The notes below the pieces were generated by a model that saw nothing but the letters and a program-made list of their open reading frames with translations, had not been told where the DNA came from and searched no databases. A DNA stretch of 64,000 bases, from IMG/VR virus record IMGVR_UViG_3300025319_000005, positions 62,001 to 126,000 of that record. One strand, given 5' to 3'. The position numbers and the translations under genes were made by a program. Of the stretch, positions 468 to 27,104 are shown piece after piece (positions within the stretch are counted from its first letter, which is position 1; each line of letters begins with the position of its first letter).

Positions 468-704
468 TTACAAGGCAGTTATTAAAAATTTAGCTATGGC
501 TTCCAATTCTTCTGCATGAATTAAAATCGAGCCATTACCTTCTGCTTTATCTACTTCCAAGCCAGTAGAACTTAAATGTCCTATTCGACTTCGTTGTCCA
601 TCAATTGTTCTGAATATCCAGAAGTTTCCAACACCATCATCAATAAATTCAAGTTTATGATTTTTGAATACAGGGTTTTCTATTATTTTGGTTATTGTTT
701 TCAT
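468..704 (-). CDS. hypothetical protein
   Basis: Array orientation; stop lies in TGTAAC box. Confidence 0.75.
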   Translation of the reverse strand: MKTITKIIENPVFKNHKLEFIDDGVGNFWIFRTIDGQRSRIGHLSSTGLEVDKAEGNGSILIHAEELEAIAKFLITAL

Positions 705-707
705 GGC

Positions 708-893
708 TTATTTTCTTTCGTTGATTACCTGATAAATTAAATCCTCAACCACAAGACTCCAATTTGCTGTTTCATCCTGGTTTTGAGCTGCCGGATACCT
801 TTTTAATACTTCTTGAATTTCCGCGTCAGTCAGTTCTTTTTTTAATGAATCGGCGATTGTTTCGACATCTAAGTCAATTATTTCGTTTTCCAT
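708..893 (-). CDS. small acidic hypothetical protein
   Basis: Tightly packed operon. Confidence 0.7.
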   Translation of the reverse strand: MENEIIDLDVETIADSLKKELTDAEIQEVLKRYPAAQNQDETANWSLVVEDLIYQVINERK

Positions 894-897
894 GTTG

Positions 898-1116
898 TTA
901 AGGTATTGAAATTATAACTTTTGCTTCAGGGAGAAACTGAGGCGTTACTTCAACTTTGGTTGTGTAAAATTCAGCATCATCAGGAGCAAGTCCTTGATGG
1001 TCAGCAACATCCTGCAACCCTCCTGCAATGTTGTTAGTAATTGTTTTTATATCTTCATCAGATGTGATTTTATCTGAAAAGGTAAGTGTTACTAAAAATG
1101 TGTGTGTCTTACTCAT
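898..1116 (-). CDS. hypothetical protein
   Basis: Motif upstream. Confidence 0.75.
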   Translation of the reverse strand: MSKTHTFLVTLTFSDKITSDEDIKTITNNIAGGLQDVADHQGLAPDDAEFYTTKVEVTPQFLPEAKVIISIP

Positions 1117-1175
1117 GGCGTTATGTTTTGTTTACAATGTACTATACAAGAAATAATTGAATGGTGTTACAAATA

Positions 1176-1373
1176 TTATTCGACTTGTAAAATCCTATCA
1201 AGAATCATTCTCTCAACATTCCCATTCTTTATTTTGTTCGCCCACATACCGGCAATTGCTATAAACTCATCCAATGTATCGGCTTCATCAATTTCTTCTG
1301 TTATTTGTTCTAAATCATCTCCCTCTAAGGTGATGGATTTTTTGTATTCTGATTTCAATTTGTCTAATGTCAT
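1176..1373 (-). CDS. small acidic hypothetical protein
   Basis: Array orientation. Confidence 0.7.
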   Translation of the reverse strand: MTLDKLKSEYKKSITLEGDDLEQITEEIDEADTLDEFIAIAGMWANKIKNGNVERMILDRILQVE

Positions 1374-1378
1374 AGCGT

Positions 1379-1555
1379 TTAGTTTTTTACGTTAATTTCA
1401 GTCATTAATATAAAGTCTTCAAGTTCAGCTCCGTCAAGTGATTTACCACCGTCAGCATAAAATGAAGCAAGCATCATTTCACTTAACTCTTTGAGTTTTG
1501 TTGCAATTTCAACGGCTGTTCCACTTCCTGTTATTTTAATTTCTAATTCTTCCAT
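1379..1555 (-). CDS. hypothetical protein (58 aa, not in ORF track)
   Basis: MEELEIKITGSG...; motif upstream at 1576. Confidence 0.7.
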   Translation of the reverse strand: MEELEIKITGSGTAVEIATKLKELSEMMLASFYADGGKSLDGAELEDFILMTEINVKN

Positions 1556-1629
1556 GATATTTTGTTTTTGTTTACAATGTACTATACAAGAAATAATTGA
1601 ATGGTGTTACAGATACGTGAATATATTTG

Positions 1630-2442
1630 TTACGCTTCCACCGCAATTTTACTGTTTTCTATTCGGGCGTTTTTCATTTCCTCCCTGTTTTGTGGGAAAA
1701 TATCCCCAAGTTCCTCAACAGTTAAAGTTTTAAATCCTTTAAAACGTTCAAGAAATTTTTTATTGATTGAAATGTTTTGTTCAAATTCAATTGGTTTTTT
1801 ATCTTCTTTTGCACTCTTCAATTCATCTTTTGAACAATCGTTTTTGCTTTCAGGATAGTATGCTTTCAAATAAGTAGAAGCATCAACAGGTGTCATACGT
1901 TTTAGTTTTTCAACTGTGCTATCTCCACCGATATTAACAAAGCAGTATTTTGGATTTTTAAGTGTAAAATCCATAATTAACACGCCATCATTATTATCTC
2001 CCTTATCAAAAGAACTACTATATATCAATTCGTTCTCGTCTATATGTTCTTCATTTAAAAGACTTAAATGGTCAATGCCAATACGACAATATTTACCCAA
2101 CTCAAAATCAAACATATTTTGCATATAATTTTTAAACCATTCGATTACATCATTTGGATTTTTTATGCTATCACATTTTTTGTGTAGTAAATTATTATAA
2201 CCATAGGTATCTTCGTGAAAATCTTTAACGGCGAATAAGACTTGAGAAGCCACTAAAGCAAAAGAGCGACCGTATAACCATTGGTGATGAAAAGCAACTA
2301 TAATGGTATTTTCTTCACCATACATTTGTTTCCATTTTTTGTATATTTCCTGGTTTGCTACATAACCGGTAATATCCTCTCTCCATTCCTTTTTGGAATC
2401 AATTTTTATTCTTTTTGCCCATGTTTTGCCAATATTTGGCAT
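1630..2442 (-). CDS. hypothetical protein
   Basis: 270-aa ORF, motif upstream. Confidence 0.75.
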   Translation of the reverse strand: MPNIGKTWAKRIKIDSKKEWREDITGYVANQEIYKKWKQMYGEENTIIVAFHHQWLYGRSFALVASQVLFAVKDFHEDTYGYNNLLHKKCDSIKNPNDVIEWFKNYMQNMFDFELGKYCRIGIDHLSLLNEEHIDENELIYSSSFDKGDNNDGVLIMDFTLKNPKYCFVNIGGDSTVEKLKRMTPVDASTYLKAYYPESKNDCSKDELKSAKEDKKPIEFEQNISINKKFLERFKGFKTLTVEELGDIFPQNREEMKNARIENSKIAVEA

Positions 2443-2592
2443 CTGGATATAAATTTGGCTGCGTTGTCCGATAATTTTAACGACCTTTTGGGTTCGCCCT
2501 CGTTTTAATTAATACTTATTTATAATGTACTATACAAGAAATAATTTGATTGTGTTACAACTTCGTTGGGTTACACCACAAATAATATGTTT

Positions 2593-2892
2593 TTATTTCA
2601 CCAGTTCTCCCTCGCCGTGTTTTCCGGTTAATATTTCTGTGTGGATTTTACTGCAGAATGCAAGAATATCTCCCTGTGGATAATCTCCGCTACTATAAGG
2701 GCAAGTTATTCTAAGAAACAATTTTGACTCCAGCCGGCTGATGAATTTATGTATTGTTCCGGATTTTACAATATTGATTTGATTATCTAAGAAAAACTTA
2801 AAGTGTGTTGAATACTCAACATCTTCGTTTATCCTGTACCACTGTTTTTCTTTTGATTTTTCTCCCATGATTTTTATTTTTAAATATGACAA
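2593..2892 (-). CDS. hypothetical protein
   Basis: Array orientation; start uncertain. Confidence 0.6.
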   Translation of the reverse strand: MSYLKIKIMGEKSKEKQWYRINEDVEYSTHFKFFLDNQINIVKSGTIHKFISRLESKLFLRITCPYSSGDYPQGDILAFCSKIHTEILTGKHGEGELVK

Positions 2893-3641
2893 TCTAAAAT
2901 TGTTATTTGAAAATTCCTATCTTCTGTTTTGTTTAAGTTTAAAAAATAGTTATACTTTTCGATAAGAAATTTCTCATTAATGTTTTCATCTCCCTCATAA
3001 TATGTTTCTTCATCTCCGTTTTCATCTTCAATGATAATATTACAAATCATTCTTTTTACAGCATCTTCTTTCGACATATTTTCATTCCAACTCTTTTGTA
3101 TTGCCTTGAATTTGTTTATTATATCTTGTGCTGAAATATCTTCAGAAATTAGCATTTCACTTTGTCCATCTAATTCCAAATGCGAACACGCTTCTATTAA
3201 TTCCATTTCGCTTATTTTAACGTATTCTTGTACGTTATCTCGATATTTTTCTGCTACCTTTTCATCTTTTAAGTTAAGAGCTTTTTTCAAAAGAGCCTTT
3301 AATTCTTCTTCGCTTTTACAGGTTGGCAATATATTTTTCCAACGACCACCTACCTCACACCAATCATACATCGAATCGCTGTTATAGCTATTTCCATATT
3401 CTCCATATTTTAAATCGAGATGTGAGTATTCTCCCTCCATAAACTCGGCTAATGTTGGATATGTTTTTTCTATTTCAGGAACTTCTTTTATTGTGTTCTT
3501 ATATAGCTTTTTTGCTTGTTTTGCAGTATATTCAACTTCAAATGTTATTTCTGCTCCATCGTCTTCGGTTGCATCGCAATTATGTTTTGCCATTATGGAA
3601 GATTCTTCGCTTTCGTGGATTAATAAAACTGAGAAGTGCAT
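2880..3641 (-). CDS. phage hypothetical protein (MHFSVL...YDWCEVGGRW...ILDCHI)
   Basis: DW-x-x-GGRW and C-terminal DCH pattern typical of a recurrent phage family. Confidence 0.75.
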   Translation of the reverse strand: MHFSVLLIHESEESSIMAKHNCDATEDDGAEITFEVEYTAKQAKKLYKNTIKEVPEIEKTYPTLAEFMEGEYSHLDLKYGEYGNSYNSDSMYDWCEVGGRWKNILPTCKSEEELKALLKKALNLKDEKVAEKYRDNVQEYVKISEMELIEACSHLELDGQSEMLISEDISAQDIINKFKAIQKSWNENMSKEDAVKRMICNIIIEDENGDEETYYEGDENINEKFLIEKYNYFLNLNKTEDRNFQITILDCHI

Positions 3642-3705
3642 AGGATATAATTTTAGTTTGTGTTATAATGTACTATACCAAGAAAAATTGAGCTACGTTA
3701 CAAAA

Positions 3706-4038
3706 TCAATCATCATTTTCAACTTCTTCTTCACCTGTTTCCCATTCTTTTTCTGTGATGATATATCCAAAACGATTAACATAATGAAATCCTGCAGAAA
3801 TAATAAGTTTGCCATCTACATCTAAAATAGTCCAAACACGTTTTTTGGTTTTTTCATCTTGTGCCATTTTAAGGATATATGCTTCTTCCTCTCTATAAGT
3901 TTCATACATTGTTCCACCAAAAGAACAAACATCTTCATCTTTAATTAAAATGTTGGTTTCAGCTCTAATAATATGATTTATTTGAGGCTTATACTCTTTG
4001 TAAAAAACTTCGTCTTTTATTTTCTTTATCTTTTTCAT
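3706..4038 (-). CDS. hypothetical protein
   Basis: Start reassigned downstream of motif at 4058. Confidence 0.7.
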   Translation of the reverse strand: MKKIKKIKDEVFYKEYKPQINHIIRAETNILIKDEDVCSFGGTMYETYREEEAYILKMAQDEKTKKRVWTILDVDGKLIISAGFHYVNRFGYIITEKEWETGEEEVENDD

Positions 4039-4103
4039 GATTTTGTAATTTTTTATTATTGCACTATACAAAAAATTAAATTCCTGTGTTACAAAAAGAA
4101 ACT

Positions 4104-4439
4104 TCACACTCTATCTTGCAGATTTTGGATTAGTTCTTCTAAAATAAACTGCTCCTTATATGGCATTTCAGAATCAACGTTCTTAGCTTCTTTTTTGATT
4201 TCTTTACAAACTTGAGATGCAATTTTTGCTACAACTTCCTTAAATTCGGGATACCTTTCAAGACCAATTAAGGGTTTGACTTTATAGTAGTTATCATTAA
4301 CATATTTAAGGTCATCTTCATAACTGATAGAAACAATCGCTTTCATGTAGGGACTATATGCTAAATTGCCGACTTTGATTTTTGAATAATCATCTTTTTC
4401 AATCTTGTATTTGACGTTATTATAAGTTGCTGTTTCCAT
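4104..4439 (-). CDS. hypothetical protein
   Basis: Motif upstream. Confidence 0.75.
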   Translation of the reverse strand: METATYNNVKYKIEKDDYSKIKVGNLAYSPYMKAIVSISYEDDLKYVNDNYYKVKPLIGLERYPEFKEVVAKIASQVCKEIKKEAKNVDSEMPYKEQFILEELIQNLQDRV

Positions 4440-4494
4440 TTTGTTTTTGGTTTATAATGTACTATACCAATTTTAATTTAATCGCGTTACACTT

Positions 4495-4689
4495 TTAAAT
4501 ATGTTTCTCCGCATTTTCTCTATTCTTGAAATAAACAGTATCCATTGTTCCTGCAAAAGGGTTTTGTTCTTTTATAGTAAATGCTTTATCTCCAGCTTCA
4601 ATTGAAATTCCTGTGTCTTTAAATAAAAACAAGCCTGCTTCATCTTTCCCGATGGTTACTTCCTTAACTTTTTCTCCTGTGATTTTCAT
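4495..4689 (-). CDS. hypothetical protein
   Basis: Motif upstream. Confidence 0.65.
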   Translation of the reverse strand: MKITGEKVKEVTIGKDEAGLFLFKDTGISIEAGDKAFTIKEQNPFAGTMDTVYFKNRENAEKHI

Positions 4690-4857
4690 ACTGTTTAATT
4701 AAATTATGTTTATATTTTTTCATGTTATATTGGTTGTTGGTTTGTGATGTGATATTTTGTTTGTTATAATGTACTATACAAATTTTAATTCTTTTGTGTT
4801 ACAAAGAAGGCGGATGTGGCGTCACAGGCTGGTTTCAGGCGATTTTTTGATTTATTA

Positions 4858-4939
4858 GATATACGTAAAATCCAATTCAATTTTTGTCACAAACTTAATT
4901 CTTTTTGTGACAGAATTTCAGATTTATGTTTCGTATATC
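4858..4939. repeat. Nested palindromic element copy 1
   Basis: GATATACG..TGTCAC-N16-GTGACA..CGTATATC. Confidence 0.95.
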
Positions 4940-5071
4940 CAAATAAAAATTAAATCCTACTTTAGGAGCCCTGGGAAATTCTGAAGCTCCGGTGCTTCAG
5001 AATCAGGATTTTACGCAAACAAAAAGCCCAGGAATTTTCCCGGGCTTCGTGTGAAATGTAAAAATATATCT

Positions 5072-5458
5072 TTAATCAATGCACAAATATCCTTTAAGAT
5101 TTACTGCTGGACAAAACATTAGCAACTCATCAATTGCTGTAACATCGCCACTTGCACATTGCTCTTTAATGAGTTCTAAACATTCGTCAATTAATAACTG
5201 CTTGCGTTTCTTTTGCTCTTCCTGTACTTCTGCGATTGCGTTTTTCACAAGGATACAATCGAAATCAGAGGATTTTACTTCTGGATTTGTTTTTCCTATA
5301 TTTGAAATAATTTCACCGTCAATAGTAATTGTAGCAATTACTCTTGCATTTTCAGAGTTCGGGTTGGTATCGGGATAACAGTCAATTGAAATTTCTCCTG
5401 TTTCTTCATTAGTATAATCTGTTATTACCTCTGCAAAAATTTGGATTTTGTTTTTCAT
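5072..5458 (-). CDS. hypothetical protein
   Basis: ATG overlaps upstream stop. Confidence 0.7.
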   Translation of the reverse strand: MKNKIQIFAEVITDYTNEETGEISIDCYPDTNPNSENARVIATITIDGEIISNIGKTNPEVKSSDFDCILVKNAIAEVQEEQKKRKQLLIDECLELIKEQCASGDVTAIDELLMFCPAVNLKGYLCID

Positions 5459-5778
5459 TATATTTGTTTTGGGTTTATAGTAAATTTCCAATGCAACAAT
5501 TGTTTCTTTCCAACCTCATAGTAAATTTCCAGTATAGCAATTGCTTCTTTCCAACCTCCTTTATATTTGTGTTGTTTTATACCTTGCTCAACAAATTTTT
5601 CAAGTATATTTGATGACTGTTCTAAAAGAAGTGGTGTTTCTGCAACAATAACTTCCCACGTAAATGCTTTTTTCCCTGCTCTAAAACTAAACTTCTCCCC
5701 ATTAAGCGTTTCATAAACATGAATTTCTTTTGGACCGGGGTTTAATACTTCTTTAAGTGTGAGAGTTAGTTTTGCCAT
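5458..5778 (-). CDS. hypothetical protein
   Basis: Motif upstream. Confidence 0.75.
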   Translation of the reverse strand: MAKLTLTLKEVLNPGPKEIHVYETLNGEKFSFRAGKKAFTWEVIVAETPLLLEQSSNILEKFVEQGIKQHKYKGGWKEAIAILEIYYEVGKKQLLHWKFTINPKQI

Positions 5779-5828
5779 GATGTTTCGTTTTGGTTATAAT
5801 GTACTATACAAGAAATAATTGGATTGCG

Positions 5829-6029
5829 TTACACCTCTTCGTTTTCTTGTATATTTATATCATCTGCATCAATGCCAGAGCTTAAAATTTGTGCGCCTAA
5901 ACAACTCGGTTCATTCTGCAGAGCTAAATTAATTAGGTCAATTGCAGTTAGAGCATCTGCTACCATGTTTCCATGAATTCTAGGTATGTCTACTTGTATT
6001 GTCAGGTTTTTGATTGTGATTGTTTTCAT
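5829..6029 (-). CDS. hypothetical protein
   Basis: Motif upstream; stop in TGTAAC. Confidence 0.7.
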   Translation of the reverse strand: MKTITIKNLTIQVDIPRIHGNMVADALTAIDLINLALQNEPSCLGAQILSSGIDADDINIQENEEV

Positions 6030-6089
6030 AAGCTATGTTTTTTTGGTTTATAATGCACTATACAAGATTTAATTTAATGGCGTTACAAC

Positions 6090-6530
6090 TTATTGAGAAA
6101 TCAAAGTTTGTCTGTAAGAGTTTGATATTTCATTACTCCAATGATAGGGTTCTACACATTCCTTAAAGTATTGTTCTGGAGTTAAATCTCTTGTATAAAC
6201 ATATTTAAAGAAATTTTCTTTTATAAGTTCTTTATAGCGAACATCTCTACTCTCTTTAGTTGGAAAATTTTGATAAATTCTACCGACTTTAGGAGAAATA
6301 TAACTTAACTCAAATGGAGTTTCAAAGTTTTTAATATTCATTACAAAATCAATTCCATAAGACCATTCATCTTTGGTATCAATAACGGTAAAATCCCTTT
6401 TCAACCCTTTTAAATCATTCCTGGATTTTCCTTCTATAAACAAATGCACAATAGAAATACACTCCATTCTTTTAGCTGAAAGCTCCATCGCATATTTCTC
6501 AGCATCAAGATATTTTTTAAAAGTTTTCAT
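6090..6530 (-). CDS. hypothetical protein
   Basis: Motif upstream. Confidence 0.75.
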   Translation of the reverse strand: MKTFKKYLDAEKYAMELSAKRMECISIVHLFIEGKSRNDLKGLKRDFTVIDTKDEWSYGIDFVMNIKNFETPFELSYISPKVGRIYQNFPTKESRDVRYKELIKENFFKYVYTRDLTPEQYFKECVEPYHWSNEISNSYRQTLISQ

Positions 6531-6590
6531 TTGTTTGTGTTTTGGTTATAATGTACTATACAAATTTTAATTTAAGGGCGTTACAATTTT

Positions 6591-7208
6591 TCAGTTTTTT
6601 TCTATCTCTTTCAACATTTCAACTTCTTCTGTTTCAAGTTGAGCGTATTCGTTTAATTTATTTGTGTGTTCAGTTGCAAGTTTTTCGATTACCTTTTCTT
6701 TATCAATTTTCAATTTTTTTATACAAGTGAGTACTTCTATTTGAACTTCACGTTTGTTTTTGGAAATATTTACTTTATCACCATGAACAGCACCCCAAAC
6801 ATTTTTACCAACTTCTTCTTGAATTGATATTTCACAACATACTATTCCCAATATGTTTAAGTCAAACAAATTAATTTTATATACCCCTATTTTAGAATTA
6901 TGCTTTTCAAAGTAAGCAAATCTAGGTGTAATCTTTGTAATTACGTCCGACCATACTTTATGAGAATAAACACTGGAGAACCAAAACACATCACCAACTT
7001 TAACATCAGATTTTATTCGTGTATCAACAAAATAGGATTTGTCAGCTTGAATGTAAATTCCCATTAGTTTGGGATGTTTAACTGTATAAACATTTTCAAA
7101 AGTGTGAATTTCTACTTCTACCTCCGTTCCTTTCTCAATTGGACAGACAGCGTGCGACCATTTAGGACATTTTAGGCTCTTTGCTAATATTAGTTTCTTC
7201 GTTTCCAT
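6591..7208 (-). CDS. hypothetical protein
   Basis: Motif upstream. Confidence 0.75.
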   Translation of the reverse strand: METKKLILAKSLKCPKWSHAVCPIEKGTEVEVEIHTFENVYTVKHPKLMGIYIQADKSYFVDTRIKSDVKVGDVFWFSSVYSHKVWSDVITKITPRFAYFEKHNSKIGVYKINLFDLNILGIVCCEISIQEEVGKNVWGAVHGDKVNISKNKREVQIEVLTCIKKLKIDKEKVIEKLATEHTNKLNEYAQLETEEVEMLKEIEKN

Positions 7209-7509
7209 AGAAAATTCTGTTTTTATTGGTTTGTAATGTACTATACCAAAAATTAAATTGCCGTGTTACACTTTTAAATTGATATTCTCAGCTATTAAAA
7301 ATAGGCTTTCGTCTATTAAAAATCAGTTTTTAACTATTTTATTAAATTGTTAATAATATCCAGCCTACTTTTACAGTGAATGTCAAATATGATACAGATC
7401 ACCAAAATTAGTGATAAACATCACTTAGTTTTAAGAAACAGATAAATAACTCTATCGTTTAATTTTATATAAACTGAACCGTCAGAAACGGCAACTTAAA
7501 AAACAGATT

Positions 7510-8445: not shown

Positions 8446-8452
8446 GGGAATA

Positions 8453-19933: not shown

Positions 19934-19945
19934 GTTTTTTTGGTT

Positions 19946-20239: not shown

Positions 20240-20291
20240 GGAATATGGTTTTTGGTTTGTAGTGTACTATACCAATTTTAATTTAAGGGTG

Positions 20292-20561
20292 TTACAGATA
20301 TAATCCAATTTCTTTAATGTCCTTTTTCATTTGTTTTTCAAATGAAGTGCCCGAAACATCATATTGTTCAGACTCATCATTAAGAATTGCTACTACAATT
20401 GCTTTCGGAATAAGCATTGGATTGGAATTTGGACTCCAAGCATCAATGTCTATTGCTCCACAATTAAGAGCTTTATCAACTTTTTTCTTCGCTTGTTCAA
20501 AACTTTCTTTTAACATTTGAACTGCCAACTTTTTGATTTGAGATTTCTTTTTATTTGTCAT
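20292..20561 (-). CDS. hypothetical protein
   Basis: Stop in TGTAAC. Confidence 0.7.
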   Translation of the reverse strand: MTNKKKSQIKKLAVQMLKESFEQAKKKVDKALNCGAIDIDAWSPNSNPMLIPKAIVVAILNDESEQYDVSGTSFEKQMKKDIKEIGLYL

Positions 20562-20567
20562 GATTTT

Positions 20568-20924
20568 TTATTTAGTTTGATAAACAATTTGGTGTACTGT
20601 TCTAACTTTACCGCTTTCGAGGATTTTACTTGAACTTTCTTCTACGAAAAACACTTTGTTTTTGAACGCTTGTTTCATTAAGTTTGCTTTTTGTCTTGCT
20701 TTGCCGATTGGAACAATACCTTTTGTCCTATCACATTTATAAGTATCAATAGGTTCTCTTTGACCACTTACTTCGTTATTGTGAGTTGAAAATATTTTAT
20801 AATCTAAAGGAACAAGTATAAAATTTTCTTCTTCAACTACTTCAATGCTTTTTGTAATATTCAAATCACATATCACATCTAAGTTCAAACTATCTAAATC
20901 TCCAAATATGTCATCAATTTCCAT
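20568..20924 (-). CDS. hypothetical protein
   Basis: Motif upstream. Confidence 0.7.
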   Translation of the reverse strand: MEIDDIFGDLDSLNLDVICDLNITKSIEVVEEENFILVPLDYKIFSTHNNEVSGQREPIDTYKCDRTKGIVPIGKARQKANLMKQAFKNKVFFVEESSSKILESGKVRTVHQIVYQTK

Positions 20925-20975
20925 AGCTTTAAGTTGTTGGTTATAATGTACTATACCAAAAAAAATTGGATTGCG

Positions 20976-21212
20976 TTACATATCAGTTAAACATAAATGA
21001 GAATTTTTAGACAAAACGTCCTTATAAAACTCCTGCTTTTCAACAATTTCCTGTTCAACTGTTTTTTCAGCTTCCCATATATCTATTTTTTTTGTTTGAT
21101 AGTAAGAAAGTTTCCAACATTTGCGGATTCCTTTAATTGCTTCTTTTTTGTTATTAGCATTAATGCTATAACAATTTGCACTTTCTGATAAATAATACTT
21201 ATATCTTTTCAT
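20976..21212 (-). CDS. hypothetical protein filling exactly the space between two motifs
   Basis: ATG follows motif, TAA in next TGTAAC. Confidence 0.75.
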   Translation of the reverse strand: MKRYKYYLSESANCYSINANNKKEAIKGIRKCWKLSYYQTKKIDIWEAEKTVEQEIVEKQEFYKDVLSKNSHLCLTDM

Positions 21213-21336
21213 AATGTACTATACAAGAAAAAAACGAATTTCGTTACAACTTCGTTGGGTTACACCACAAATATCCGTGCATAAAAACTGGGACTCCAGC
21301 CGGCGTACATCTCTGGCGTAAAAATCCTAAATATTT

Positions 21337-21418
21337 GATATACGTAAAATCCAATTCAATTTCTGTCACGAATTAATTTATTTTTGTGACAGGATTTCAC
21401 TTTTATATTTCGTATATC
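21337..21418. repeat. Nested palindromic element copy 6
   Basis: Same architecture. Confidence 0.95.
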
Positions 21419-21603
21419 CTTATCCGGTAAAATCCTCTAGCTGGCCACCGCCTGGGGAATTTTTTTCAAGCTCTTACTTTGGGCATCAGGATTTTACACA
21501 AAACAAAAAGCCCCAACATTTCTGTTGAGGCCTTTGTCAATAAGTTCACTCCGTATTACTCCGCAGTGCCTATTCGAGGAAAATGGTGCGCCATATCCCT
21601 ATA

Positions 21604-21858
21604 TTAAAAAAACTTAATTTCTGATTTTGGAAAATTATATTTAATACCTTGAACAATAGTTAAGTGAATAACCGCATAATCTCCATTCATATACTCTATA
21701 AGCTGTCCTACTTTTATGGCTGGACAACCAATAGTATTAACACGAAATAAATCCCATCTGTTGTTTATTTGTCCGAAATTATCTTCTTGTGTAGTTGGTT
21801 TACTCGCACAATTAAATTCATTATTTTGTATTTTTACAACTTTTTTATCTGTGTTCAT
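21604..21858 (-). CDS. hypothetical protein
   Basis: Motif upstream. Confidence 0.7.
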   Translation of the reverse strand: MNTDKKVVKIQNNEFNCASKPTTQEDNFGQINNRWDLFRVNTIGCPAIKVGQLIEYMNGDYAVIHLTIVQGIKYNFPKSEIKFF

Positions 21859-21928
21859 GGCTTTGGGTTTTGTTATGTCGTACTATACAAAAGAAATTAA
21901 AACTACGTTACAACTCCGTTGAACTTTG

Positions 21929-22210
21929 TTACACATAAAACGCTTTAACACTCATATTAAAATATTTAATTTTTGATACAGGTTCAAACAAATCATTAAT
22001 GATTATTTTATCTACAATAGGAATAGATTTGATTTTCAGACTCGTACTTTCTCCATAGGCTTCGATTTCTACTTCTCTACGCATTATCTTTACATTTACA
22101 AACCCTGCTGAATACACTTTTTTAAAACCTTTAGCTACTTGTTTGTGAATTGTGTTTTCATTAAATAATATAGCACCGCTGTCAGTAATTATGTATTTGA
22201 ATATTGGCAT
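21929..22210 (-). CDS. phage hypothetical protein
   Basis: H...SAGF...YGESTSL pattern. Confidence 0.7.
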   Translation of the reverse strand: MPIFKYIITDSGAILFNENTIHKQVAKGFKKVYSAGFVNVKIMRREVEIEAYGESTSLKIKSIPIVDKIIINDLFEPVSKIKYFNMSVKAFYV

Positions 22211-22220
22211 AGATACACTC

Positions 22221-22415
22221 TTAATTCATTGAATATTTTATATGGGTTTCTGGATATAGATTTTTATCACCTAACCACACATACAAAACTATCCACGAAG
22301 GGAATTTCTTTAATTCATAATTTAAAATAGGTTGAAAGCATTTCAAATTAGCCCTCATGTCTAACCATTCATTTTCAATATAACCTCTGAATTTTATGTT
22401 TTTATTTTCCATCAC
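22221..22415 (-). CDS. hypothetical protein
   Basis: Motif upstream. Confidence 0.65.
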   Translation of the reverse strand: MMENKNIKFRGYIENEWLDMRANLKCFQPILNYELKKFPSWIVLYVWLGDKNLYPETHIKYSMN

Positions 22416-22461
22416 TTAAATGTTGGTTGTAATGTACTATACGAAAAAGAATAGAGCTATG

Positions 22462-22647
22462 TTACAACTCATCATCTTTAGATTTGTGTTTTGTTTTTCT
22501 ACTATGTTTAGTTCCGCTACACATATAACAGCTACAAGGCTTACCCTGCTCTTTATATTCATAGTGTTCTTTAGGATTTAAGCCTAATTCGTTACACCTC
22601 TTCTTCTGTTTTAGTTTAGATATCTCTTGTCGTCTTGCCTTATTCAT
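22462..22647 (-). CDS. small basic Cys-cluster protein
   Basis: PCSCYMC; stop in TGTAAC; start reassigned. Confidence 0.65.
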   Translation of the reverse strand: MNKARRQEISKLKQKKRCNELGLNPKEHYEYKEQGKPCSCYMCSGTKHSRKTKHKSKDDEL

Positions 22648-22795
22648 TATCGTTTTTAGATTTTTTACGGTTGTACTTTGTTTTGTCTTTAAAAGTTTTA
22701 GGCATAAACCTACCATCGTATGCACCAGCTTCTTTCATAGCTTCACGCTTACGTTCTAATATTAAGGATTTTACGGTACGTTTTTTCTTTGCCAT
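22640..22795 (-). CDS. small basic protein
   Basis: GAYDGRF...KDKTKYNRK; start reassigned. Confidence 0.6.
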   Translation of the reverse strand: MAKKKRTVKSLILERKREAMKEAGAYDGRFMPKTFKDKTKYNRKKSKNDNE

Positions 22796-22805
22796 TATGA
22801 TTTGA

Positions 22806-23042
22806 TTAATTTGCACAAAGTTTATCTTGGTCTTTAACACTTATTTTTATTCCAGTACTCAACATTTGCTTATAAGAGTTAATAATATCTCTTTGATTTT
22901 CTATCGTTTGTCTTTGAAATTCTGATGAACTTTCTTTAAGGTAGTACGCTTTTCTCCAATTAATAACATTTTTAATCAAACGAACAATAAGAAGCATTGC
23001 CATTCCTAATAAAATTGCGAGTATCATTGTGGTTGTTGTCAT
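22806..23042 (-). CDS. single-pass membrane protein
   Basis: Hydrophobic N-terminus; motif upstream. Confidence 0.7.
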   Translation of the reverse strand: MTTTTMILAILLGMAMLLIVRLIKNVINWRKAYYLKESSSEFQRQTIENQRDIINSYKQMLSTGIKISVKDQDKLCAN

Positions 23043-23173
23043 AGTTTTAAATTATTGGTTATTGTACTATACAAATATAAATAGTATTACGTTACGAAAA
23101 ATCAGAATAACATGGCGGATGTTTCTGGAGAAGCCCGTCGCCGGCGAGTTCTGGAGCTATTTTTGATTTATTA

Positions 23174-23255
23174 GATATACGTTTAATCAAAGCCAATTTG
23201 TGTCACGAAAAGAATTTAATTAGTGACAGGATTTCGGGTTTAAATTTCGTATATC
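23174..23255. repeat. Nested palindromic element copy 7
   Basis: Same architecture; alternative left arm, reversed central spacer. Confidence 0.95.
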
Positions 23256-23424
23256 TAAATTAAAAGAAAAATCCTGTTCTGGAGCCTCCTGGCCGGATTT
23301 CCTTCAGCTTCAGTTTCTTGCGGTGAATGGGTTAGTTTAACTCCGCAAAAGTGCGTCGAACAGAAAACAAAAAACCCCCGCATTTCTGCAAAGGGCTTTC
23401 TGAACCAACCAATAAATTAAAAAG

Positions 23425-23497
23425 TGGAAAGGGTAGGAATTGAACCCACGACACGAGTGCTTTCGACACCCTGCTCTACCAACTGAGCTACCTCACC
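23425..23497 (-). tRNA. tRNA-Phe(GAA), non-canonical C33
   Basis: GGTGAGG TA GCTC AGTTGGTA GAGC A GGGTG TCGAAAG CACTC GTGTC GTGGG TTCAATT CCTAC CCTTTCC A. Confidence 0.85.
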
Positions 23498-23664
23498 ATA
23501 GTTTCGTTCTTCCTGATGTTAGGCATTTATACTCAAGCATCTTCCCCGAACGACAAAGGCTTGAGATTTTCTTTAATGGCGCATGATTTCTAAGTTTTAG
23601 TGAGTCGTTATCTCGTTAATAATGTTGCTTTAGAATGTACTATACGAATTTTAATTCTTTGGTG

Positions 23665-23901
23665 TTACAATTTTATTTCTTTTTCAGTTCCGCAAATAGC
23701 ACAGGTGCTTCTTTTTGGATCAGAAATAGTTGGAGTTTCAGCATCGCATAGAATACATTTATGATAAGCCAATTTAACTTTATTAGCATAATCATAAACT
23801 GCTGTTGCTCCAGTTGCAGTATATAACTTTTCACATATCTCTCTTGTTACATTAGCTAAACTCTCTCTAAGAAATTTCGGTTTTTGTGGTTTCCTTGCCA
23901 T
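23665..23901 (-). CDS. Zn-ribbon protein
   Basis: CILC...CAICG; stop in TGTAAC. Confidence 0.7.
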   Translation of the reverse strand: MARKPQKPKFLRESLANVTREICEKLYTATGATAVYDYANKVKLAYHKCILCDAETPTISDPKRSTCAICGTEKEIKL

Positions 23902-24059
23902 AGCGTTATAATTTGTTTTTAATCAGCCTACCACTTGTTGTCTTTAGTGCCTCGACATCTTTTGACCAATTTTATTGGCTCGATTTCTCTGCTGATAATG
24001 TACTATACAAAATTAAATCGGATTGCGTTACAAAAAGAATATAATAGGGAGAGTTTATT

Positions 24060-24881
24060 TTAGATAAGTGTTTTAAGATACAAAACAAAAGCGTTCATAT
24101 CTACCTCATTTGCGTTTTCAAATTTATCATTTATTGAATGGCAAAGACTCCATGTATAACAAAAACCTCTTGTTATTACATTGTTCATACACACATCATT
24201 TAAAGAACCAATACAAATGCTTGGAAGTCCATTTTTTTCAAAAGTATTTGAATCACTTGGCGGTATTCTAACCCTACGGATTTCGGGCTTATCAATCATA
24301 TTTGACATTCTATAACCCATCCAATAATTTTGCCCATTTGCCGTGAGTTCTAACACAAATATTTTATTCACATTTCCATATTTGTTTTCTAATATTTGTT
24401 TAGCTATTTTTGTTGCACCCGATGTTGTTAAACTCACTCTTTCTTCCGAATCGTTAAAACATATTACTACATTGTTTGCTGGTTTTTCTTTTGATAATTG
24501 AATACATAAATCCAAGAGATTACATACACTCGCACTGTTATCTTGACATGATTCACTATTTATATTTGCAACGTCATGGTGTGCCGTAAATATAGTAGTT
24601 ATTTCTTTATTATGTCCTTCAATCTCAACTACAATATTAACTTCGGCAGGCAATCCTTCAACAAAGTCAGGAACGTCCAAAATCGGTTGATACATACTAA
24701 CAATAAATTTTATATCATTAATTTCAAGTTGGTGCATAATATACTGCACTCTATTTGTAATTGGGTTTAAGTTATTTGTGAAAGCATTAAAGTCTGCATT
24801 GAACGCACATAACTCACGGAGCATTTCATACCCATTCTTAATTTTTATCGGCTTTTCTATTTTCTCTGTATCTGTGTCCAT
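24060..24881 (-). CDS. M28-family Zn metallopeptidase-like protein
   Basis: TAHHD, QDNSASV, DSEE, SDS and late CHS-x-x-D motifs. Confidence 0.85.
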   Translation of the reverse strand: MDTDTEKIEKPIKIKNGYEMLRELCAFNADFNAFTNNLNPITNRVQYIMHQLEINDIKFIVSMYQPILDVPDFVEGLPAEVNIVVEIEGHNKEITTIFTAHHDVANINSESCQDNSASVCNLLDLCIQLSKEKPANNVVICFNDSEERVSLTTSGATKIAKQILENKYGNVNKIFVLELTANGQNYWMGYRMSNMIDKPEIRRVRIPPSDSNTFEKNGLPSICIGSLNDVCMNNVITRGFCYTWSLCHSINDKFENANEVDMNAFVLYLKTLI

Positions 24882-25011
24882 AATGTACTATACGAAATAT
24901 AATTTATATTTGTTACAAAGTTAATATTAAATAATTGCAAATGAAACAGTTAAAACAAAACGAGAACTACTGGAGAAGCTCCGTCGAGCTGGTTCTAAAT
25001 TATTTATTCGA

Positions 25012-25093
25012 GATATACGTAAAATCCAACTCAATTTGTGTCACGAATTAAATTATTTTCGTGACAGGATTTCGCTTTTATATTTCGTATATC
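25012..25093. repeat. Nested palindromic element copy 8
   Basis: Same architecture. Confidence 0.95.
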
Positions 25094-25257
25094 CTTATCT
25101 GGTAAAAATCCACGAGCTGGACGCCTGGCCAGGAATTTCCTTCAGCTCCTCCGGGGTAAACTATATTTTGGCACCAGTTTCAATCTGCTGTCGAATTATA
25201 GAAAACAAAAAACCCCTGCATTTCTGCAAGGGCTTCTCGTACCAACCAACCAATAAT

Positions 25258-25488
25258 TTACATTTTCGCCTTCTCAATGGCTTTTACAATATCTTTTATT
25301 CCAATGTTTTGAGTTTTGCTTGCATATAAATAACTTTGAATGTATGCTTCCGAGTAACCTGTTTTTACCATTGCTTTAGCTTTTAATTCTAAAGGTGGTA
25401 TTTCATACATTTGGGCACGTTGCTTATCTCTTAAAATTTGCAAGTTGCGTTCAGCTTCTTTGATTTCACTTTTTAATGGATTTTTCAT
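25258..25488 (-). CDS. hypothetical protein
   Basis: ORF track. Confidence 0.65.
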   Translation of the reverse strand: MKNPLKSEIKEAERNLQILRDKQRAQMYEIPPLELKAKAMVKTGYSEAYIQSYLYASKTQNIGIKDIVKAIEKAKM

Positions 25489-25757
25489 AGTTACATTTGT
25501 TTTTCAGTACTTACAATAACGGAATTTCCATCTTCTTTACAAAGTAGTGTTCCTTCAATTTGAACATTAACACAACCTTTTTCAGATAGTTGTTCTAATT
25601 CAAAAATTAGTTTGTTTATGTTTATCGTTTCCATTGTGTTTAATTGTTGGTTATAATGTACTATACCAAAAATAAAATTACTGCGTTACAATAATATATC
25701 CCGTGCATAAAACTGGGACTCCAGCCGGCGAGCTCTGGTGTAAAATCCTAAATTTAT

Positions 25758-25839
25758 AATATACACTTAATCAAACTCAATTTGTGTCACAAAATAAATT
25801 CTTTTCGTGACAAACTATCACTTTTAGTTTGCGTATATC
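25758..25839. repeat. Nested palindromic element copy 9
   Basis: Same architecture, AATATACA variant. Confidence 0.9.
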
Positions 25840-26009
25840 TCCCTAAGGTAAAATACACCACCGGCCAGCCTGCTGAGCCCAGGAATTTTTCAGGAATAGG
25901 CATCAGGATTTCATTTTGGCTTTAAGTGGGTCAAAAACATGAGTTATGGCCAAAAACAAAAAACCCCTGCATTTCTGCAAGGGCTTTCTGAACCGAACCA
26001 ACCAATGTA

Positions 26010-26369
26010 TTATATTTCTCTTCGTATTTCTCTGCGTGATTCTAATATTTTTGAATTGGGATACCAAAAACTTTGCTTGTGTATTTGAGAGTACCCTTTC
26101 TCCCCCGTGAAATAATCAACCCAAAATGCGAACAGTTCTATTTCGCCATTCTTGTCCTCTGTCAGCAACAATGTCCTTGATAACTCTTTTAACTGTGCAA
26201 ATCTTTTCATTGCCCAATCTCCATAACTGAATCGGTCTTTCCAAAAATGATATGCGACCTCTCTCCCTCATTGTTCATCAACAGCACGATGTAGGATTTT
26301 ACGTTCATTTTCCTCATTTTTGAAAACATAGGGAAAGTTAGCTAATATGTAGGGAGTGCTTAGTATCAT
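26010..26369 (-). pseudogene. hypothetical gene interrupted by one in-frame TGA (26268-26270)
   Basis: MILSTPY...DEQ*GREVAYHFW...MKRFAQ in one frame. Confidence 0.5.
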
Positions 26370-26519
26370 TATATTTTTTGAGATTTCGGGTGTTTTATTT
26401 TTTTGTTTTTCAACAAAGTCTGATAAGCCTTACCATACTTATCGTTTGAATACTTACCACGACTAACTTTTTCTTTTTCTGCTTTCATAATGTACTATAC
26501 AAGTTTTAATTCTTCTGCG

Positions 26520-27104
26520 TTACATTTGTAAAACACTTCTAATTTCAGCTTCTTTTGTTTTTGGAAAAATCCAACCTGCACCACAAGTTAAACGAAAATT
26601 GAAACGACCGCCCAATGCTTTTAAAGTATCTTTGATAGGTTTAGTATCTCCAATTATTGCAATTGCCTTTTCTGAATAATCAACTACTTTAATTTTACCA
26701 TCATTTTCAATTGGTTCAACTTTTACATTTGTTGGTTTTTTCGGTAACTCTGTTTTAGGAATGTATTTAAAAGGTTTATCCCATTCTCCAATACTTAAAC
26801 TTGTGTAAAACTTTGGAATAGCACCATAATCTCCATCAATAGAAACTATTTCATTGTTTCCTTCCATTATATCAACAATCTTTTGCAATGCTTCTGCTAC
26901 TTCAGTATTGTCTTTATAGTGGTCTTTGATGTAGTAATGATTAACCCCTTCATAATCTTTTTCTGTCAGCTTAATATCAGTTTCCAAAATAACAACGTTA
27001 ATACTCGAATAGTGTCGTCTTGTAATACTGAATTTCCAATTAGGAAATGCTAATTTAATTGCTTTCCTTTTTTCTGCGATTTGTTCCGTTGAAATATATG
27101 GCAT
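26520..27104 (-). CDS. LPD29-like domain protein with C-terminal DYSEKA...GGRFN...GWIF domain
   Basis: AFPNWKFSI..YSSINV N-terminus resembles polyvalent-protein-associated domain; recalled, not searched. Confidence 0.55.
   Translation of the reverse strand: MPYISTEQIAEKRKAIKLAFPNWKFSITRRHYSSINVVILETDIKLTEKDYEGVNHYYIKDHYKDNTEVAEALQKIVDIMEGNNEIVSIDGDYGAIPKFYTSLSIGEWDKPFKYIPKTELPKKPTNVKVEPIENDGKIKVVDYSEKAIAIIGDTKPIKDTLKALGGRFNFRLTCGAGWIFPKTKEAEIRSVLQM

What the first reader, a model, noticed from the sequence alone, without database searches (positions are those of the whole stretch)
468..27104. ORFs end inside the TGTAAC box and start right after the GTATAG box
Seen: at least 11 ORFs use the TAA of TG-TAA-C as stop (ends at 468, 5829, 11157, 12330, 17809, 19529, 20292, 20976, 22462, 23665, 26520). 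About 8 have ATG directly after GTATAGYRCAWT (9416, 10178, 12298, 15734, 21212, 24881, 26488, 30952). ORF 20976-21212 does both. This recalls integron cassettes, whose stop often lies in the RYYYAAC inverse core. Inference: the repeat supplies stop codon, promoter and a leaderless start, so inserted DNA could be expressed at once.
Basis: partly seen in the sequence, partly recalled or inferred. Interest (0 to 1): 0.65.

Follow-up and report, generated by a model that had tools for sequence, protein, structure and literature searches.

The report
Huge-phage promoter repeat with leaderless starts
The repeated TGTAAC...GTATAG element is a phage promoter present about 70 times in this 213-kb phage genome; it is packed so tightly between small genes that its first box often holds the previous gene's stop codon and the next gene's ATG often sits where transcription should begin, and relatives show the same layout.

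Summary
All 11 stop-in-box ORFs and all 8 ATG-after-box ORFs are at the stated coordinates, and both patterns exceed chance.

The repeat is a bipartite promoter, tTGTAAC-N18-GTATAGTACATTAtaA. It has 50 copies in the window and 69 in the 212,632-bp virus record, always pointing the way the downstream genes run. A 519-kb relative has 52 copies, and at least 15 metagenome contigs have 3-14 each.

Over 213 unique copies:
- **Starts:** the first long ORF starts at exactly +12 from the G of GTATAG in 72, at +13 to +22 in only 3, and otherwise mostly at +23 to +45.
- **Stops:** the nearest upstream ORF is in frame with the box TAA in 87 of 153 cases (1/3 expected, p=2e-9) and stops on it in 47.

The motif follows ECF-sigma grammar (AAC in the -35, CGTA in the -10). 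Both phages encode an orthologous ECF-type sigma behind a copy of the promoter.

Indels between related contigs are single gene units joined at the promoter. This resembles T4-type PeSL shuffling, not integrons: there is no attC-like fold, no IntI and no shared Pc.

Leaderless initiation is inferred, not mapped.

The parts
432..31363 (.). Array of 50 promoter copies (tTGTAAC-N18-GTATAGTACATTAtaA): 47 on the minus strand, then 3 on the plus strand after the divergence point near 30.3 kb
9412..9452 (-). Promoter copy with ATG at +12; drives ORF 9198-9416 (72 aa)
10174..10214 (-). Promoter copy, leaderless type; ORF 9990-10178 (62 aa). Its G001 orthologue has its start at +24
12294..12334 (-). 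Promoter whose box TAA stops ORF 12330-12671 and whose +12 ATG starts ORF 11756-12298 (180 aa)
   Evidence: the N-terminus aligns 3:2 with a leadered G001 orthologue
15730..15770 (-). Leaderless-type promoter; ORF 15525-15734 (69 aa)
21208..21248 (-). Leaderless-type promoter preceded by a second TGTAAC box; starts ORF 20976-21212
20976..21212 (-). 78-aa ORF running from +12 of one promoter to the box TAA of the next (promoter 20940-20980)
24060..24881 (-). 273-aa ORF (Peptidase_M28 domain) starting at +12 of promoter 24877-24917
   Evidence: aligns 1:1 from residue 1 with its G001 orthologue
26484..26524 (-). Promoter whose box TAA ends ORF 26520-27104 (194 aa, LPD29 domain) and whose +12 ATG opens a 39-codon ORF (26369-26488)
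30916..30956 (+). Plus-strand copy (GTATAGCACAAT) with ATG at +12; ORF 30952-31314 (120 aa)
468..704 (-). 78-aa ORF stopping on the TAA of promoter 432-472
5829..6029 (-). 66-aa ORF stopping in the box of promoter 5793-5833. Its G001 orthologue is leaderless and stops at -38
11157..11411 (-). 84-aa ORF ending in the box of the promoter that drives tRNA-Phe
11045..11119 (-). tRNA-Phe(GAA) beginning 6 nt after the predicted start site (A at 11125) of promoter 11121-11161
17809..18006 (-). 65-aa ORF, stop codon inside the box of promoter 17773-17813
19529..19933 (-). 134-aa ORF, stop in the box of promoter 19493-19533
20292..20561 (-). 89-aa ORF, stop in the box of promoter 20256-20296
22462..22725 (-). 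ORF (84 aa from its ATG) ending on the TAA of promoter 22426-22466
23665..23901 (-). 78-aa ORF ending in the box of promoter 23629-23669, which lies upstream of the second tRNA-Phe (23424-23497)

Best explanation
The repeat is the promoter of a dense block of small genes in an uncultivated huge phage. The phage is a 213-kb record and its host is probably a Bacteroidota bacterium.

Positions are counted from the G of GTATAG as 0. The element runs from about -25 to +16 and has two rigidly spaced parts: TGTAAC at -24 to -19 and GTATAGTAC at 0 to +8. This matches the grammar of extracytoplasmic-function (ECF, group 4) sigma promoters: AAC in the -35 element, (C)GTA in the -10 element, 17-bp spacer. 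I infer that host core RNA polymerase reads it together with the ECF-type sigma that this phage and its 519-kb relative both encode behind a copy of the same promoter.

Transcription most likely starts at the conserved A at +12, which is preceded by T.
- In most units a 14-33 nt A/C-rich leader without a Shine-Dalgarno sequence follows.
- In 8 of 50 units in the window, 10 of 69 in the genome, 26 of 52 in the relative and 36 of 92 on other contigs, that A is the A of the start codon. The mRNA would then begin with AUG and be translated as a leaderless message.

The genes are packed against the next promoter. The element has fixed stop codons in all three frames: TAA at -22, TAG at +3 and, in this phage's consensus, TAA at +13. 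An upstream gene can therefore end inside it, and genes are preferentially in the frame that ends on the first of these.

Because some 45 bp are nearly identical at every joint, homologous recombination between copies can delete, duplicate or swap single gene units. Each new junction is automatically terminated, transcribed and translatable.

Shown: the anatomy, the counts, the conservation in relatives and the unit-sized indels. Inferred: the sigma assignment, the exact start site, leaderless translation and the recombination mechanism.
For: Promoter identity:
- The two boxes are invariant with a fixed 18-nt gap in 69 of the 70 loosely matched copies.
- The copies switch strand with the genes at about 30.3 kb.
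- They sit before ORFs and directly before tRNA genes.

Conservation:
- G001 has 52 copies, while its proteins are only 30-62% identical to those of this phage.
- At least 15 further metagenome contigs carry 3-14 copies each.

Starts:
- Start positions are bimodal: +12 in 72 of 213 copies, +13 to +22 in 3, and the rest mostly +23 to +45.
- All 72 ATGs at +12 open 33 or more codons, against a 21% baseline for 39 or more.
- Bases +9 to +11 vary in G001, yet the ATG stays at +12.
- Orthologues that are leaderless in one phage and leadered in the other align from residue 1-3.
- tRNAs start 6-8 nt after +12.

Stops:
- The TAA at -22 is the stop in 47 of 153 nearby upstream ORFs.
- Frame bias is 87 of 153 against 1/3 expected, p=2e-9.
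- Only a few ORFs run past the box.

Sigma:
- The sigmas of G000 and G001 both pass the sigma70-ECF model at 89 and 105 bits (cut-off 43), with SigW as the best or near-best named hit.
- A promoter copy lies upstream of the sigma operon in both phages.
- ECF promoters have AAC at -35 and CGT/CGTA at -10, stay close to consensus and are usually autoregulatory (PMC5758882).
- No RNA polymerase beta or beta' gene was found.

Host:
- Only 5 of 135 long ORFs have a Shine-Dalgarno-like 4-mer.
- TAnnTTTG boxes are enriched on the sense strand before other genes, 26 against 6.

Modularity: indels and replacements of one gene unit lie exactly at promoter copies.
Against: - Both the start site at +12 and leaderless translation are therefore inferred.
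- The genes are co-directional and strong terminators are few (about 5 per 20 kb). The +12 ATGs will thus also lie inside read-through transcripts from upstream promoters.
- The C of CGTA is present in only 22 of 69 copies in this phage, though in nearly all copies in G001.
- If this block is expressed first after injection, an ECF sigma made by the phage would not yet exist. It would have to be packaged, or a host sigma would have to start the circuit.
- No host-type promoter was seen before the sigma operon.
- The host phylum is inferred only from sequence signals. The ribonucleotide reductase is closest (62%) to contigs binned as Bdellovibrio.
- The direction and mechanism of the unit indels cannot be told from five examples at 80-92% identity.
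Confidence: 0.7

Rival explanations
1. The element is an ordinary strong early promoter read by the host's housekeeping sigma (-35-like GTAACA, 18-nt spacer, -10 TATAGT), as in the early gene blocks of T4, T5 or SPO1. The phage ECF sigma would serve another gene class.
For: - TATAGT is one base from TATAAT.
- The simple sigma-70 scan scores several copies 9 of 12.
- In the complete relative the copies cluster at both genome ends, where early genes of terminally redundant phages usually lie. Early genes normally need a sigma that is already present in the host.
Against: - The invariant bases (C at -19, G at 0 and +5, C at +8) are not the ones sigma-70 promoters conserve, and the spacer is at the upper limit.
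- The genome lacks Shine-Dalgarno sites and carries TAnnTTTG boxes before other genes. This points to a Bacteroidota host, whose primary sigma does not use -35/-10 hexamers (PMC7366714).
- The element does not contain TAnnTTTG at a fitting position.
- AAC plus CGTA with 17 bp between them is ECF grammar.
Confidence: 0.2
2. The array is an integron-like cassette system. The repeat is a recombination site (attC-like) at which a tyrosine recombinase inserts promoterless genes.
For: - TGTAAC ends in AAC like the RYYYAAC inverse core.
- Stops lie inside it.
- G000 encodes a tyrosine recombinase at genome 9998-10855 that gives a sub-threshold hit to the integron-integrase model.
- Unit-sized indels occur at the repeat.
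Against: - The element has no dyad symmetry. As single-stranded DNA it folds no better than shuffles in 8 of 8 copies (z from -1.3 to +1.5).
- There is an invariant G at a pyrimidine position of RYYYAAC, and no GTTRRRY partner.
- The recombinase scores best as XerA/XerD. The IntI model reaches 166 bits against a cut-off of 265, split into two stretches.
- G001 has the same architecture and no tyrosine recombinase.
- Every unit has its own promoter.
Confidence: 0.03
3. Stops in the box and ATGs after the box are by-products of AT-richness and tight gene packing, with no constraint of their own.
For: - TAA is the commonest stop in a 29% GC genome.
- Most upstream ORFs end within 25 nt of the box anyway.
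- Positions +12 and +13 are A and T in the promoter consensus, so a single change at +14 creates an ATG.
Against: - Packing alone predicts one third of ORFs in the TAA frame; 57% are observed (p=2e-9).
- Chance ATGs would rarely open long frames, yet 72 of 72 do.
- Chance would not leave +13 to +22 nearly empty.
- The same two patterns recur in a relative with proteins only 30-62% identical and in independent contigs.
Confidence: 0.03

Closest known systems
PeSLs (promoter-early stem-loops) of T4-type phages (PMC2839356; PMC4122927)
   Same: - A short conserved promoter-containing motif is repeated between small variable genes.
- Indels and replacements between related phages are bounded by copies of the motif.
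- This implies homologous recombination between copies as the shuffling mechanism.
- New genes arrive with expression signals.
   Different: - PeSLs are composite terminator stem-loop plus sigma-70 early promoter. This element has no stem-loop and few terminators nearby.
- Its grammar is ECF-like.
- It overlaps the coding sequence on both sides (stop in the first box, ATG at the start site).
- The phages are unrelated to T4.
ECF (group 4) sigma promoters, e.g. Bacillus subtilis sigma-W TGAAAC-N16-CGTA and sigma-X (PMC5758882)
   Same: - AAC in the -35 element.
- CGT(A) in the -10 element.
- Close adherence to consensus.
- A copy sits in front of the sigma's own operon.
- Pyrimidine-purine at the presumed start site.
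   Different: - About 50-70 copies in a phage genome, rather than a small stress regulon.
- The sigma carries a roughly 170-residue N-terminal extension.
- Conservation extends through GTATAGTAC and, in this phage, to +16.
- Sigma dependence is untested.
Leaderless genes recognised by a -10-like box at a fixed short distance before the start codon (Actinobacteria, Deinococcus, archaea; PMC3160421, PMC6028130); lambda cI from PRM (own knowledge)
   Same: - The promoter box is at a fixed distance from the ATG.
- There is no Shine-Dalgarno sequence.
- AUG is the only start codon used.
- Starts are either leaderless or have a leader long enough for ribosome binding.
   Different: - Here the pattern is a property of one phage promoter family, not of a host genome.
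- The likely host phylum uses leaderless mRNAs rarely: 3.7% in B. thetaiotaomicron and 5.5% in F. psychrophilum.
- Mapped early transcripts of the jumbo phages phiKZ and AR9 are not leaderless.
Integron attC sites and gene cassettes
   Same: - An AAC-ending motif lies at cassette borders.
- Stop codons lie within the border motif.
- The arrays are unidirectional and made of small genes.
   Different: - No attC hairpin, no IntI, no common Pc promoter.
- Each unit has its own promoter.
- Exchange is best explained by homologous, not site-specific, recombination.
Host-takeover module in the terminal redundancy of Bacillus phage SPO1 (own knowledge)
   Same: A block of many small genes, each or nearly each with a strong promoter, at the genome terminus of a large phage.
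   Different: SPO1 uses host sigma-A promoters and Shine-Dalgarno-led translation. No stop or start overlap with the promoter has been described.

Membership tests
Integron (attC / cassette array) | attC site: imperfect inverted repeats that fold as a single-stranded hairpin | tested here: not met
   Eight copies folded as ssDNA gave -0.4 to -3.9 kcal/mol and z from -1.3 to +1.5 against shuffles
Integron (attC / cassette array) | Core sites RYYYAAC and GTTRRRY | tested here: not met
   The box is (T/G)TGTAAC with an invariant G at a Y position. The other conserved part is GTATAGTAC, not GTTRRRY
Integron (attC / cassette array) | Integron integrase IntI next to the array | tested here: not met
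   The G000 recombinase scores best as XerA/XerD. The IntI model TIGR02249 gives 165.8 bits against a cut-off of 265, in two stretches. G001 has no PF00589 hit
Integron (attC / cassette array) | Promoterless cassettes expressed from one common promoter Pc | tested here: not met
   The promoter-like element precedes most units individually: 50 copies in 31 kb
ECF (group 4) sigma-dependent promoter | AAC motif in the -35 element | tested here: met
   GTAAC was fixed by the search pattern in all 69 copies of G000 and 52 of G001. The T before it, which the pattern left free, is present in 68 of 69. Rule taken from PMC5758882
ECF (group 4) sigma-dependent promoter | CGT-type -10 element, 14-17 bp from the -35 element | tested here: inconclusive
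   G001 has CGTATAG in nearly all copies with a 17-bp spacer. In G000 the C is present in 22 of 69 and GTA is invariant
ECF (group 4) sigma-dependent promoter | Cognate ECF sigma gene, usually autoregulated from the same promoter | tested here: met
   Orthologous ECF-type sigmas pass TIGR02937 at 88.9 and 104.8 bits (cut-off 42.9). Each lies in an operon behind a promoter copy
ECF (group 4) sigma-dependent promoter | Transcription depends on that sigma | not testable with these tools
   Needs in vitro transcription or a reporter assay
Leaderless mRNA | Transcription start coincides with the A of the AUG | not testable with these tools
Indirect support: fixed +12 position, T-A at -1/+1, tRNAs 6-8 nt downstream
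Leaderless mRNA | Promoter -10 box at a fixed short distance before an ATG that opens a real gene, without a Shine-Dalgarno sequence | tested here: met
   72 of 213 copies have ATG at +12, and all open 33 or more codons. Orthologue N-termini coincide. No Shine-Dalgarno use in the genome
PeSL-type mobile regulatory cassette | Indels or replacements between related phages bounded by copies of the promoter motif | tested here: met
   L199/L216: a 316-nt unit. L207/L185: a 299-nt unit. L192/L197: an insertion at the box edge. L203/L221: different genes joined at +12 of the same promoter
PeSL-type mobile regulatory cassette | Composite of terminator stem-loop plus sigma-70 early promoter, in T4-type phages | tested here: not met
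   No stem-loop in the element. Only about 5 strong terminators per 20 kb. No similarity to known phages
Bacteroidota primary-sigma promoter | TAnnTTTG box at about -7 | tested here: not met
   The element has TATAGTAC at that place. TA is not conserved at -30/-29, so TTTGTAAC is not a -7 box. True TAnnTTTG boxes precede other genes of the phage

The most novel reading that the evidence does not exclude
The element is a self-contained, portable expression joint. It combines a three-frame stop, a promoter for the phage's own ECF sigma, and a start site that doubles as a leaderless AUG. A clade of huge phages would use it as the substrate for recombinase-free cassette exchange. Any small gene recombined between two copies would be terminated, transcribed and translated at once. 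This would explain how these phages accumulate and turn over dozens of small genes.
Probability: 0.35. Interest if true: 0.78.

Novelty: new variant of a known kind. Interest (0 to 1): 0.62.

Why it matters
Huge phages are known almost only from metagenomes, and how they express their hundreds of small unknown genes is largely unstudied. This finding gives three things:
- a precise, testable promoter consensus;
- a candidate cognate sigma;
- a prediction that a third to a half of the transcripts from this promoter are leaderless, although mapped jumbo-phage early transcripts are not and the likely host phylum rarely uses such mRNAs.

It also improves gene calling. Start codons at +12 and stops in the box fix the gene boundaries. 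It suggests a simple route by which these genomes gain and lose genes. Finally, it offers a compact promoter/sigma pair that could be tried as an orthogonal expression part in Bacteroidota.

Tried and rejected
- **Close relatives among isolated phages.** Megablast of 10 kb found nothing and tblastn of the 861-aa ORF found nothing. A helicase gave only distant hits of 27-30%.
- **Loose promoter pattern in IMG/VR.** It returned mostly single chance hits. A stricter pattern found only G001 as a multi-copy record. Protein and profile searches with the 861-aa ORF found only G001.
- **Phage RNA polymerase.** No Rpb2_6 or Rpb1_2 hits in either phage. Very divergent split subunits cannot be excluded.
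- **Host from ribonucleotide reductase.** The best hits (62%) are contigs binned as Bdellovibrio or Pseudobdellovibrionaceae, but those genomes show no enrichment of the motif. This is left unresolved against the Bacteroidota-type signals.
- **Recent promoter exchange within G000.** Identity of the spacers and flanks was inconclusive, because the spacer consensus is strong and AT-rich.
- **Closely related genome for indel analysis.** L205 and L240 turned out to be 100% identical to G000, that is, the same phage.
- **Rfam.** Only the two tRNAs.
- **L237 unit.** My re-extraction of it failed on orientation. That example rests on the BLAST coordinates alone.
- **A second start-region motif** (ATATCACATTA) was not over-represented.

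Full report
**1. Check of the observation**

The window is bases 62,001-126,000 of a 212,632-bp IMG/VR virus record (G000). It has 29% GC and CheckV estimates it as 81% complete.

TGTAAC occurs 80 times against 32 expected, and GTATAGYRCAWT 42 times against 0.02 expected. The two motifs are parts of one element: on the strand of the genes, TGTAAC is followed after exactly 18 nt by GTATAG. With that pattern the window has 50 copies and the genome 69. In the window, 47 lie on the minus strand (448 to 30101) and 3 on the plus strand (30517, 30940, 31347).

Every coordinate in the finding holds:
- The eleven minus-strand ORFs end on the TAA of TG-TAA-C.
- The eight ATGs follow the 12-mer directly and open 39-273 codons.
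- ORF 20976-21212 does both.

**2. Anatomy**

I number from the G of GTATAG as 0. A position matrix of the 69 copies gives tTGTAAC(A/G)C at -25 to -17, then a spacer with a conserved aaTT and a T-run, then GTATAGTACATTAtaAa from 0 to +16. After that, in most copies, comes an A/C-rich stretch (AACCAAAAC-like) up to the ATG.

- The copies always point the way the downstream genes run, including the strand switch near 30.3 kb.
- Two tRNA-Phe genes follow copies. One begins 6 nt after +12.
- The element has no dyad symmetry and does not fold as single-stranded DNA.
- Only about five strong terminators lie on the gene strand in the first 20 kb, so many transcripts must overlap.

This is a promoter, not a recombination site or an RNA structure.

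**3. The element in related phages**

IMGVR_UViG_3300014205_000170 (G001) is 518,809 bp, has direct terminal repeats and is 100% complete. It carries 52 copies, almost all within 0-46 kb and 515-518.8 kb, that is, around the genome ends.

It is a real but distant relative:
- An 861-aa protein is 56% identical.
- About 30 gene pairs in the promoter-rich blocks are 30-62% identical.

A scan of metagenome contigs found at least 15 further contigs with 3-14 copies each. Two of the hits (L205, L240) are the same phage as G000.

**4. Starts**

In G000 the first ATG that opens at least 30 codons lies at +12 in 10 copies, never at +13 to +25, and at +26 to +45 (mode +31/+32) in most others. In G001 it lies at +12 in 26 of 52 copies. 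On the other contigs it lies at +12 in 36 of 92 unique copies.

Pooled over 213 unique copies: +12 in 72, and +13 to +22 in 3.

- All 72 ATGs at +12 open 33 or more codons. Only 21% of all ATGs in the genome open 39 or more.
- In G001 the bases at +9 to +11 vary freely, yet the ATG stays at +12. Distance from the box is therefore what is fixed, not sequence.
- Orthologues differ in state but not in N-terminus:

| G000 gene | Start | G001 orthologue start | Alignment begins at residues |
|---|---|---|---|
| window 24060-24881 | +12 | +15 | 1:1 |
| window 11756-12298 | +12 | +26 | 3:2 |
| window 5829-6029 | +34 | +12 | 1:1 |

A strict choice between "AUG at one fixed position" and "a leader of at least about 11-14 nt" is what is expected if transcription starts at the A at +12. 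That A is preceded by T, giving the usual pyrimidine-purine pair. Ribosomes then need either a 5'-terminal AUG or room to bind.

This is inference. I could obtain no 5' end data. Read-through from upstream promoters will also carry these ATGs internally.

**5. Stops**

Stops of the nearest upstream ORF (40 or more codons) cluster at -45 to -22, with a spike on the box TAA.

| Data set | Stops on the box TAA (-22) | Upstream ORFs in frame with that TAA |
|---|---|---|
| G000 | 12-13 (11 in the window) | 23 of 48 |
| G001 | 15 | 28 of 41 |
| Other contigs | 20 | 36 of 64 |
| Pooled | 47 | 87 of 153 (1/3 expected, p=2e-9) |

Few ORFs run past the box.

A second in-frame class stops at -28 as TAA-xTG-TAA (3, 7 and 9 cases). 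The pair L203/L221 shows the two states in orthologous ORFs...AAA TAA GTG TAA against ...AAA GTG TAA.

The other two frames are closed further in. The TAG of GTA-TAG at +3 is used 8 times. In this phage's consensus the TAA at +13 is used twice.

The stop-in-box pattern is therefore real, and tight packing alone does not explain it. I read it as compaction, plus the advantage that a stop lying in the conserved box survives any exchange between promoter copies. That second part is inference.

**6. Who reads the promoter**

- Neither phage has detectable RNA polymerase beta or beta' genes.
- G000 has a single sigma gene (genome 6960-8066, minus strand).
- That sigma and its G001 orthologue (37.5% identity) pass the sigma70-ECF model. 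Their best or near-best named hit is SigW. Both carry an N-terminal extension of about 170 residues.
- In both phages the sigma is the second gene behind a copy of the promoter.
- G001 also has two RpoD/RpoS-like sigmas elsewhere.

According to PMC5758882, ECF promoters have AAC in the -35 element and CGT in the -10 element (CGTA for sigma-W). They have spacers of 14-17 bp, adhere closely to consensus and usually autoregulate. TGTAAC-N17-(C)GTA fits this. The C is nearly universal in G001 but present in only 22 of 69 copies in G000.

The host is probably a Bacteroidota bacterium:
- Only 5 of 135 long ORFs have a Shine-Dalgarno-like 4-mer.
- The Bacteroidota primary-sigma box TAnnTTTG is enriched on the sense strand 10-40 nt before other phage genes, 26 against 6 antisense. 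The rule is taken from PMC7366714.

The repeat itself does not carry that box. I therefore assign it to the phage ECF sigma with moderate confidence.

Two difficulties remain. It is unclear how the first sigma molecules arise if this block is expressed first. And the ribonucleotide reductase is closest to Bdellovibrio-binned contigs.

**7. Modular exchange**

Between G000 and G001 the block is largely collinear, with single genes displaced. Moderately related contigs (80-92% identity) give sharper cases:
- L199 has one extra 316-nt unit relative to L216: a promoter plus a leaderless 92-aa ORF, lying exactly between two promoter copies.
- L207 has an extra 299-nt unit relative to L185. Its 84-aa ORF ends on the box TAA of the next copy, which drives a tRNA.
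- L192 has a 225-nt promoterless ORF inserted at the left edge of the box, where L197's upstream ORF stops on the box TAA.
- L203 and L221 share the upstream ORF and the promoter, but carry unrelated genes that both start at +12.

At least two other indels in these pairs are not at promoters.

This pattern matches that described for PeSLs in T4-type phages (PMC4122927): homologous recombination between repeated promoter motifs.

**8. The integron comparison**

The comparison fails on each defining feature tested:
- There is no attC-like fold.
- There is a G at a pyrimidine position of RYYYAAC, and no GTTRRRY.
- There is no IntI. The G000 recombinase is Xer-like and below the IntI cut-off, and G001 has none.
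- There is a promoter in nearly every unit.

**9. Novelty**

Each ingredient is known: ECF-type promoters, leaderless genes signalled by a box at a fixed distance (PMC3160421, PMC6028130), and promoter-mediated shuffling.

What I did not find described in the library searches is their combination:
- 50-70 near-identical copies in huge phages;
- a third to a half of them with the start codon at the start site;
- stops embedded in the first box.

Mapped jumbo phages phiKZ and AR9 have no leaderless transcripts from their mapped starts. Bacteroidota hosts have only 3.7-5.5% leaderless mRNAs.

I rate it a new variant of a known kind.

**10. Limits**

- ORFs were called mechanically, with ATG starts only.
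- The sigma assignment, start site, timing, host and recombination mechanism are all inferred.

Noticed in passing
window-wide, e.g. 1187-1195, 16022-16050, 27316-27348; also genome 49,075-49,978 (outside the window): The 9-mer GGATTTTAC occurs 42 times in the window (1 expected) and 86 times in the genome, equally on both strands. Twelve copies are packed into 0.9 kb at genome 49.1-50.0 kb, like iterons or a partition site. The phage encodes a ParB-like protein (window 58802-59551).
   Followed up: partly
window 4873, 13378, 15855, 18201, 21352, 25027, 30197 (minus); 27316, 31749 (plus): A longer repeat, TTCGTGACAGrAAwTGAATT-GGATTTTAC-GTATATC, recurs about a dozen times. It looks like a second bipartite promoter-like or operator element, distinct from the one studied.
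   Followed up: no
window 13535-13564, 16059-16088, 18359-18388 (minus strand): Three strong intrinsic-terminator hairpins share nearly the same sequence (AAAAGCCCCGGCAGAAATGTTGGGGCTTTT type). Each is followed by GTAAAATCC.
   Followed up: no
window 21250-21360 and 27160-27270 (minus strand), also near 25748: A conserved G+C-richer block of about 100 nt (…CGCCAGAG…CGCCGGCTGGAGTCCCAG…) lies upstream of two promoters where no ORF ends. It has no Rfam match and may be a small RNA or a gene remnant.
   Followed up: partly
window 2559-2590, 16785-16810, 17290-17311, 21248-21275, 27160-27185: Some promoters carry an extra upstream box, TTTGTGGTGTAACCCAACGAAGT, directly before TGTAAC. This gives two TGTAAC-like boxes about 21 nt apart, possibly a regulator site or a tandem -35 element.
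   Followed up: no
window 41628-42749 (minus strand): An intact 373-aa ORF carries a thiol-activated cytolysin domain (PF01289, 122 bits). It is preceded by a Bacteroidota-type TTG...TAnnTTTG promoter. This is an unusual cargo for a phage.
   Followed up: no
genome 9998-10855 (minus strand; locus L009), outside the window: A Xer-like tyrosine recombinase (best hits XerA/XerD) is present in G000 but absent from the 519-kb relative.
   Followed up: partly
window 11045-11119 and 23424-23497 (minus strand): Two separate tRNA-Phe(GAA) genes, each downstream of a copy of the promoter. Related contigs also place a tRNA 8 nt after +12 (L185, L207).
   Followed up: partly
window 18049 and 18843; genome 21374: In three units a roughly 28-nt insert with a small hairpin-like GCC…GGC core separates the promoter from a second copy of GTACATTA, as if the start-site region were duplicated.
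   Followed up: no
loci L199 8953-9130 and L207 (about 200 nt, at 1398-1594 in the orientation): Two roughly 200-nt indels between related contigs are not at promoters. One is flanked by a 20-nt overlap, which suggests deletion mediated by a direct repeat.
   Followed up: no
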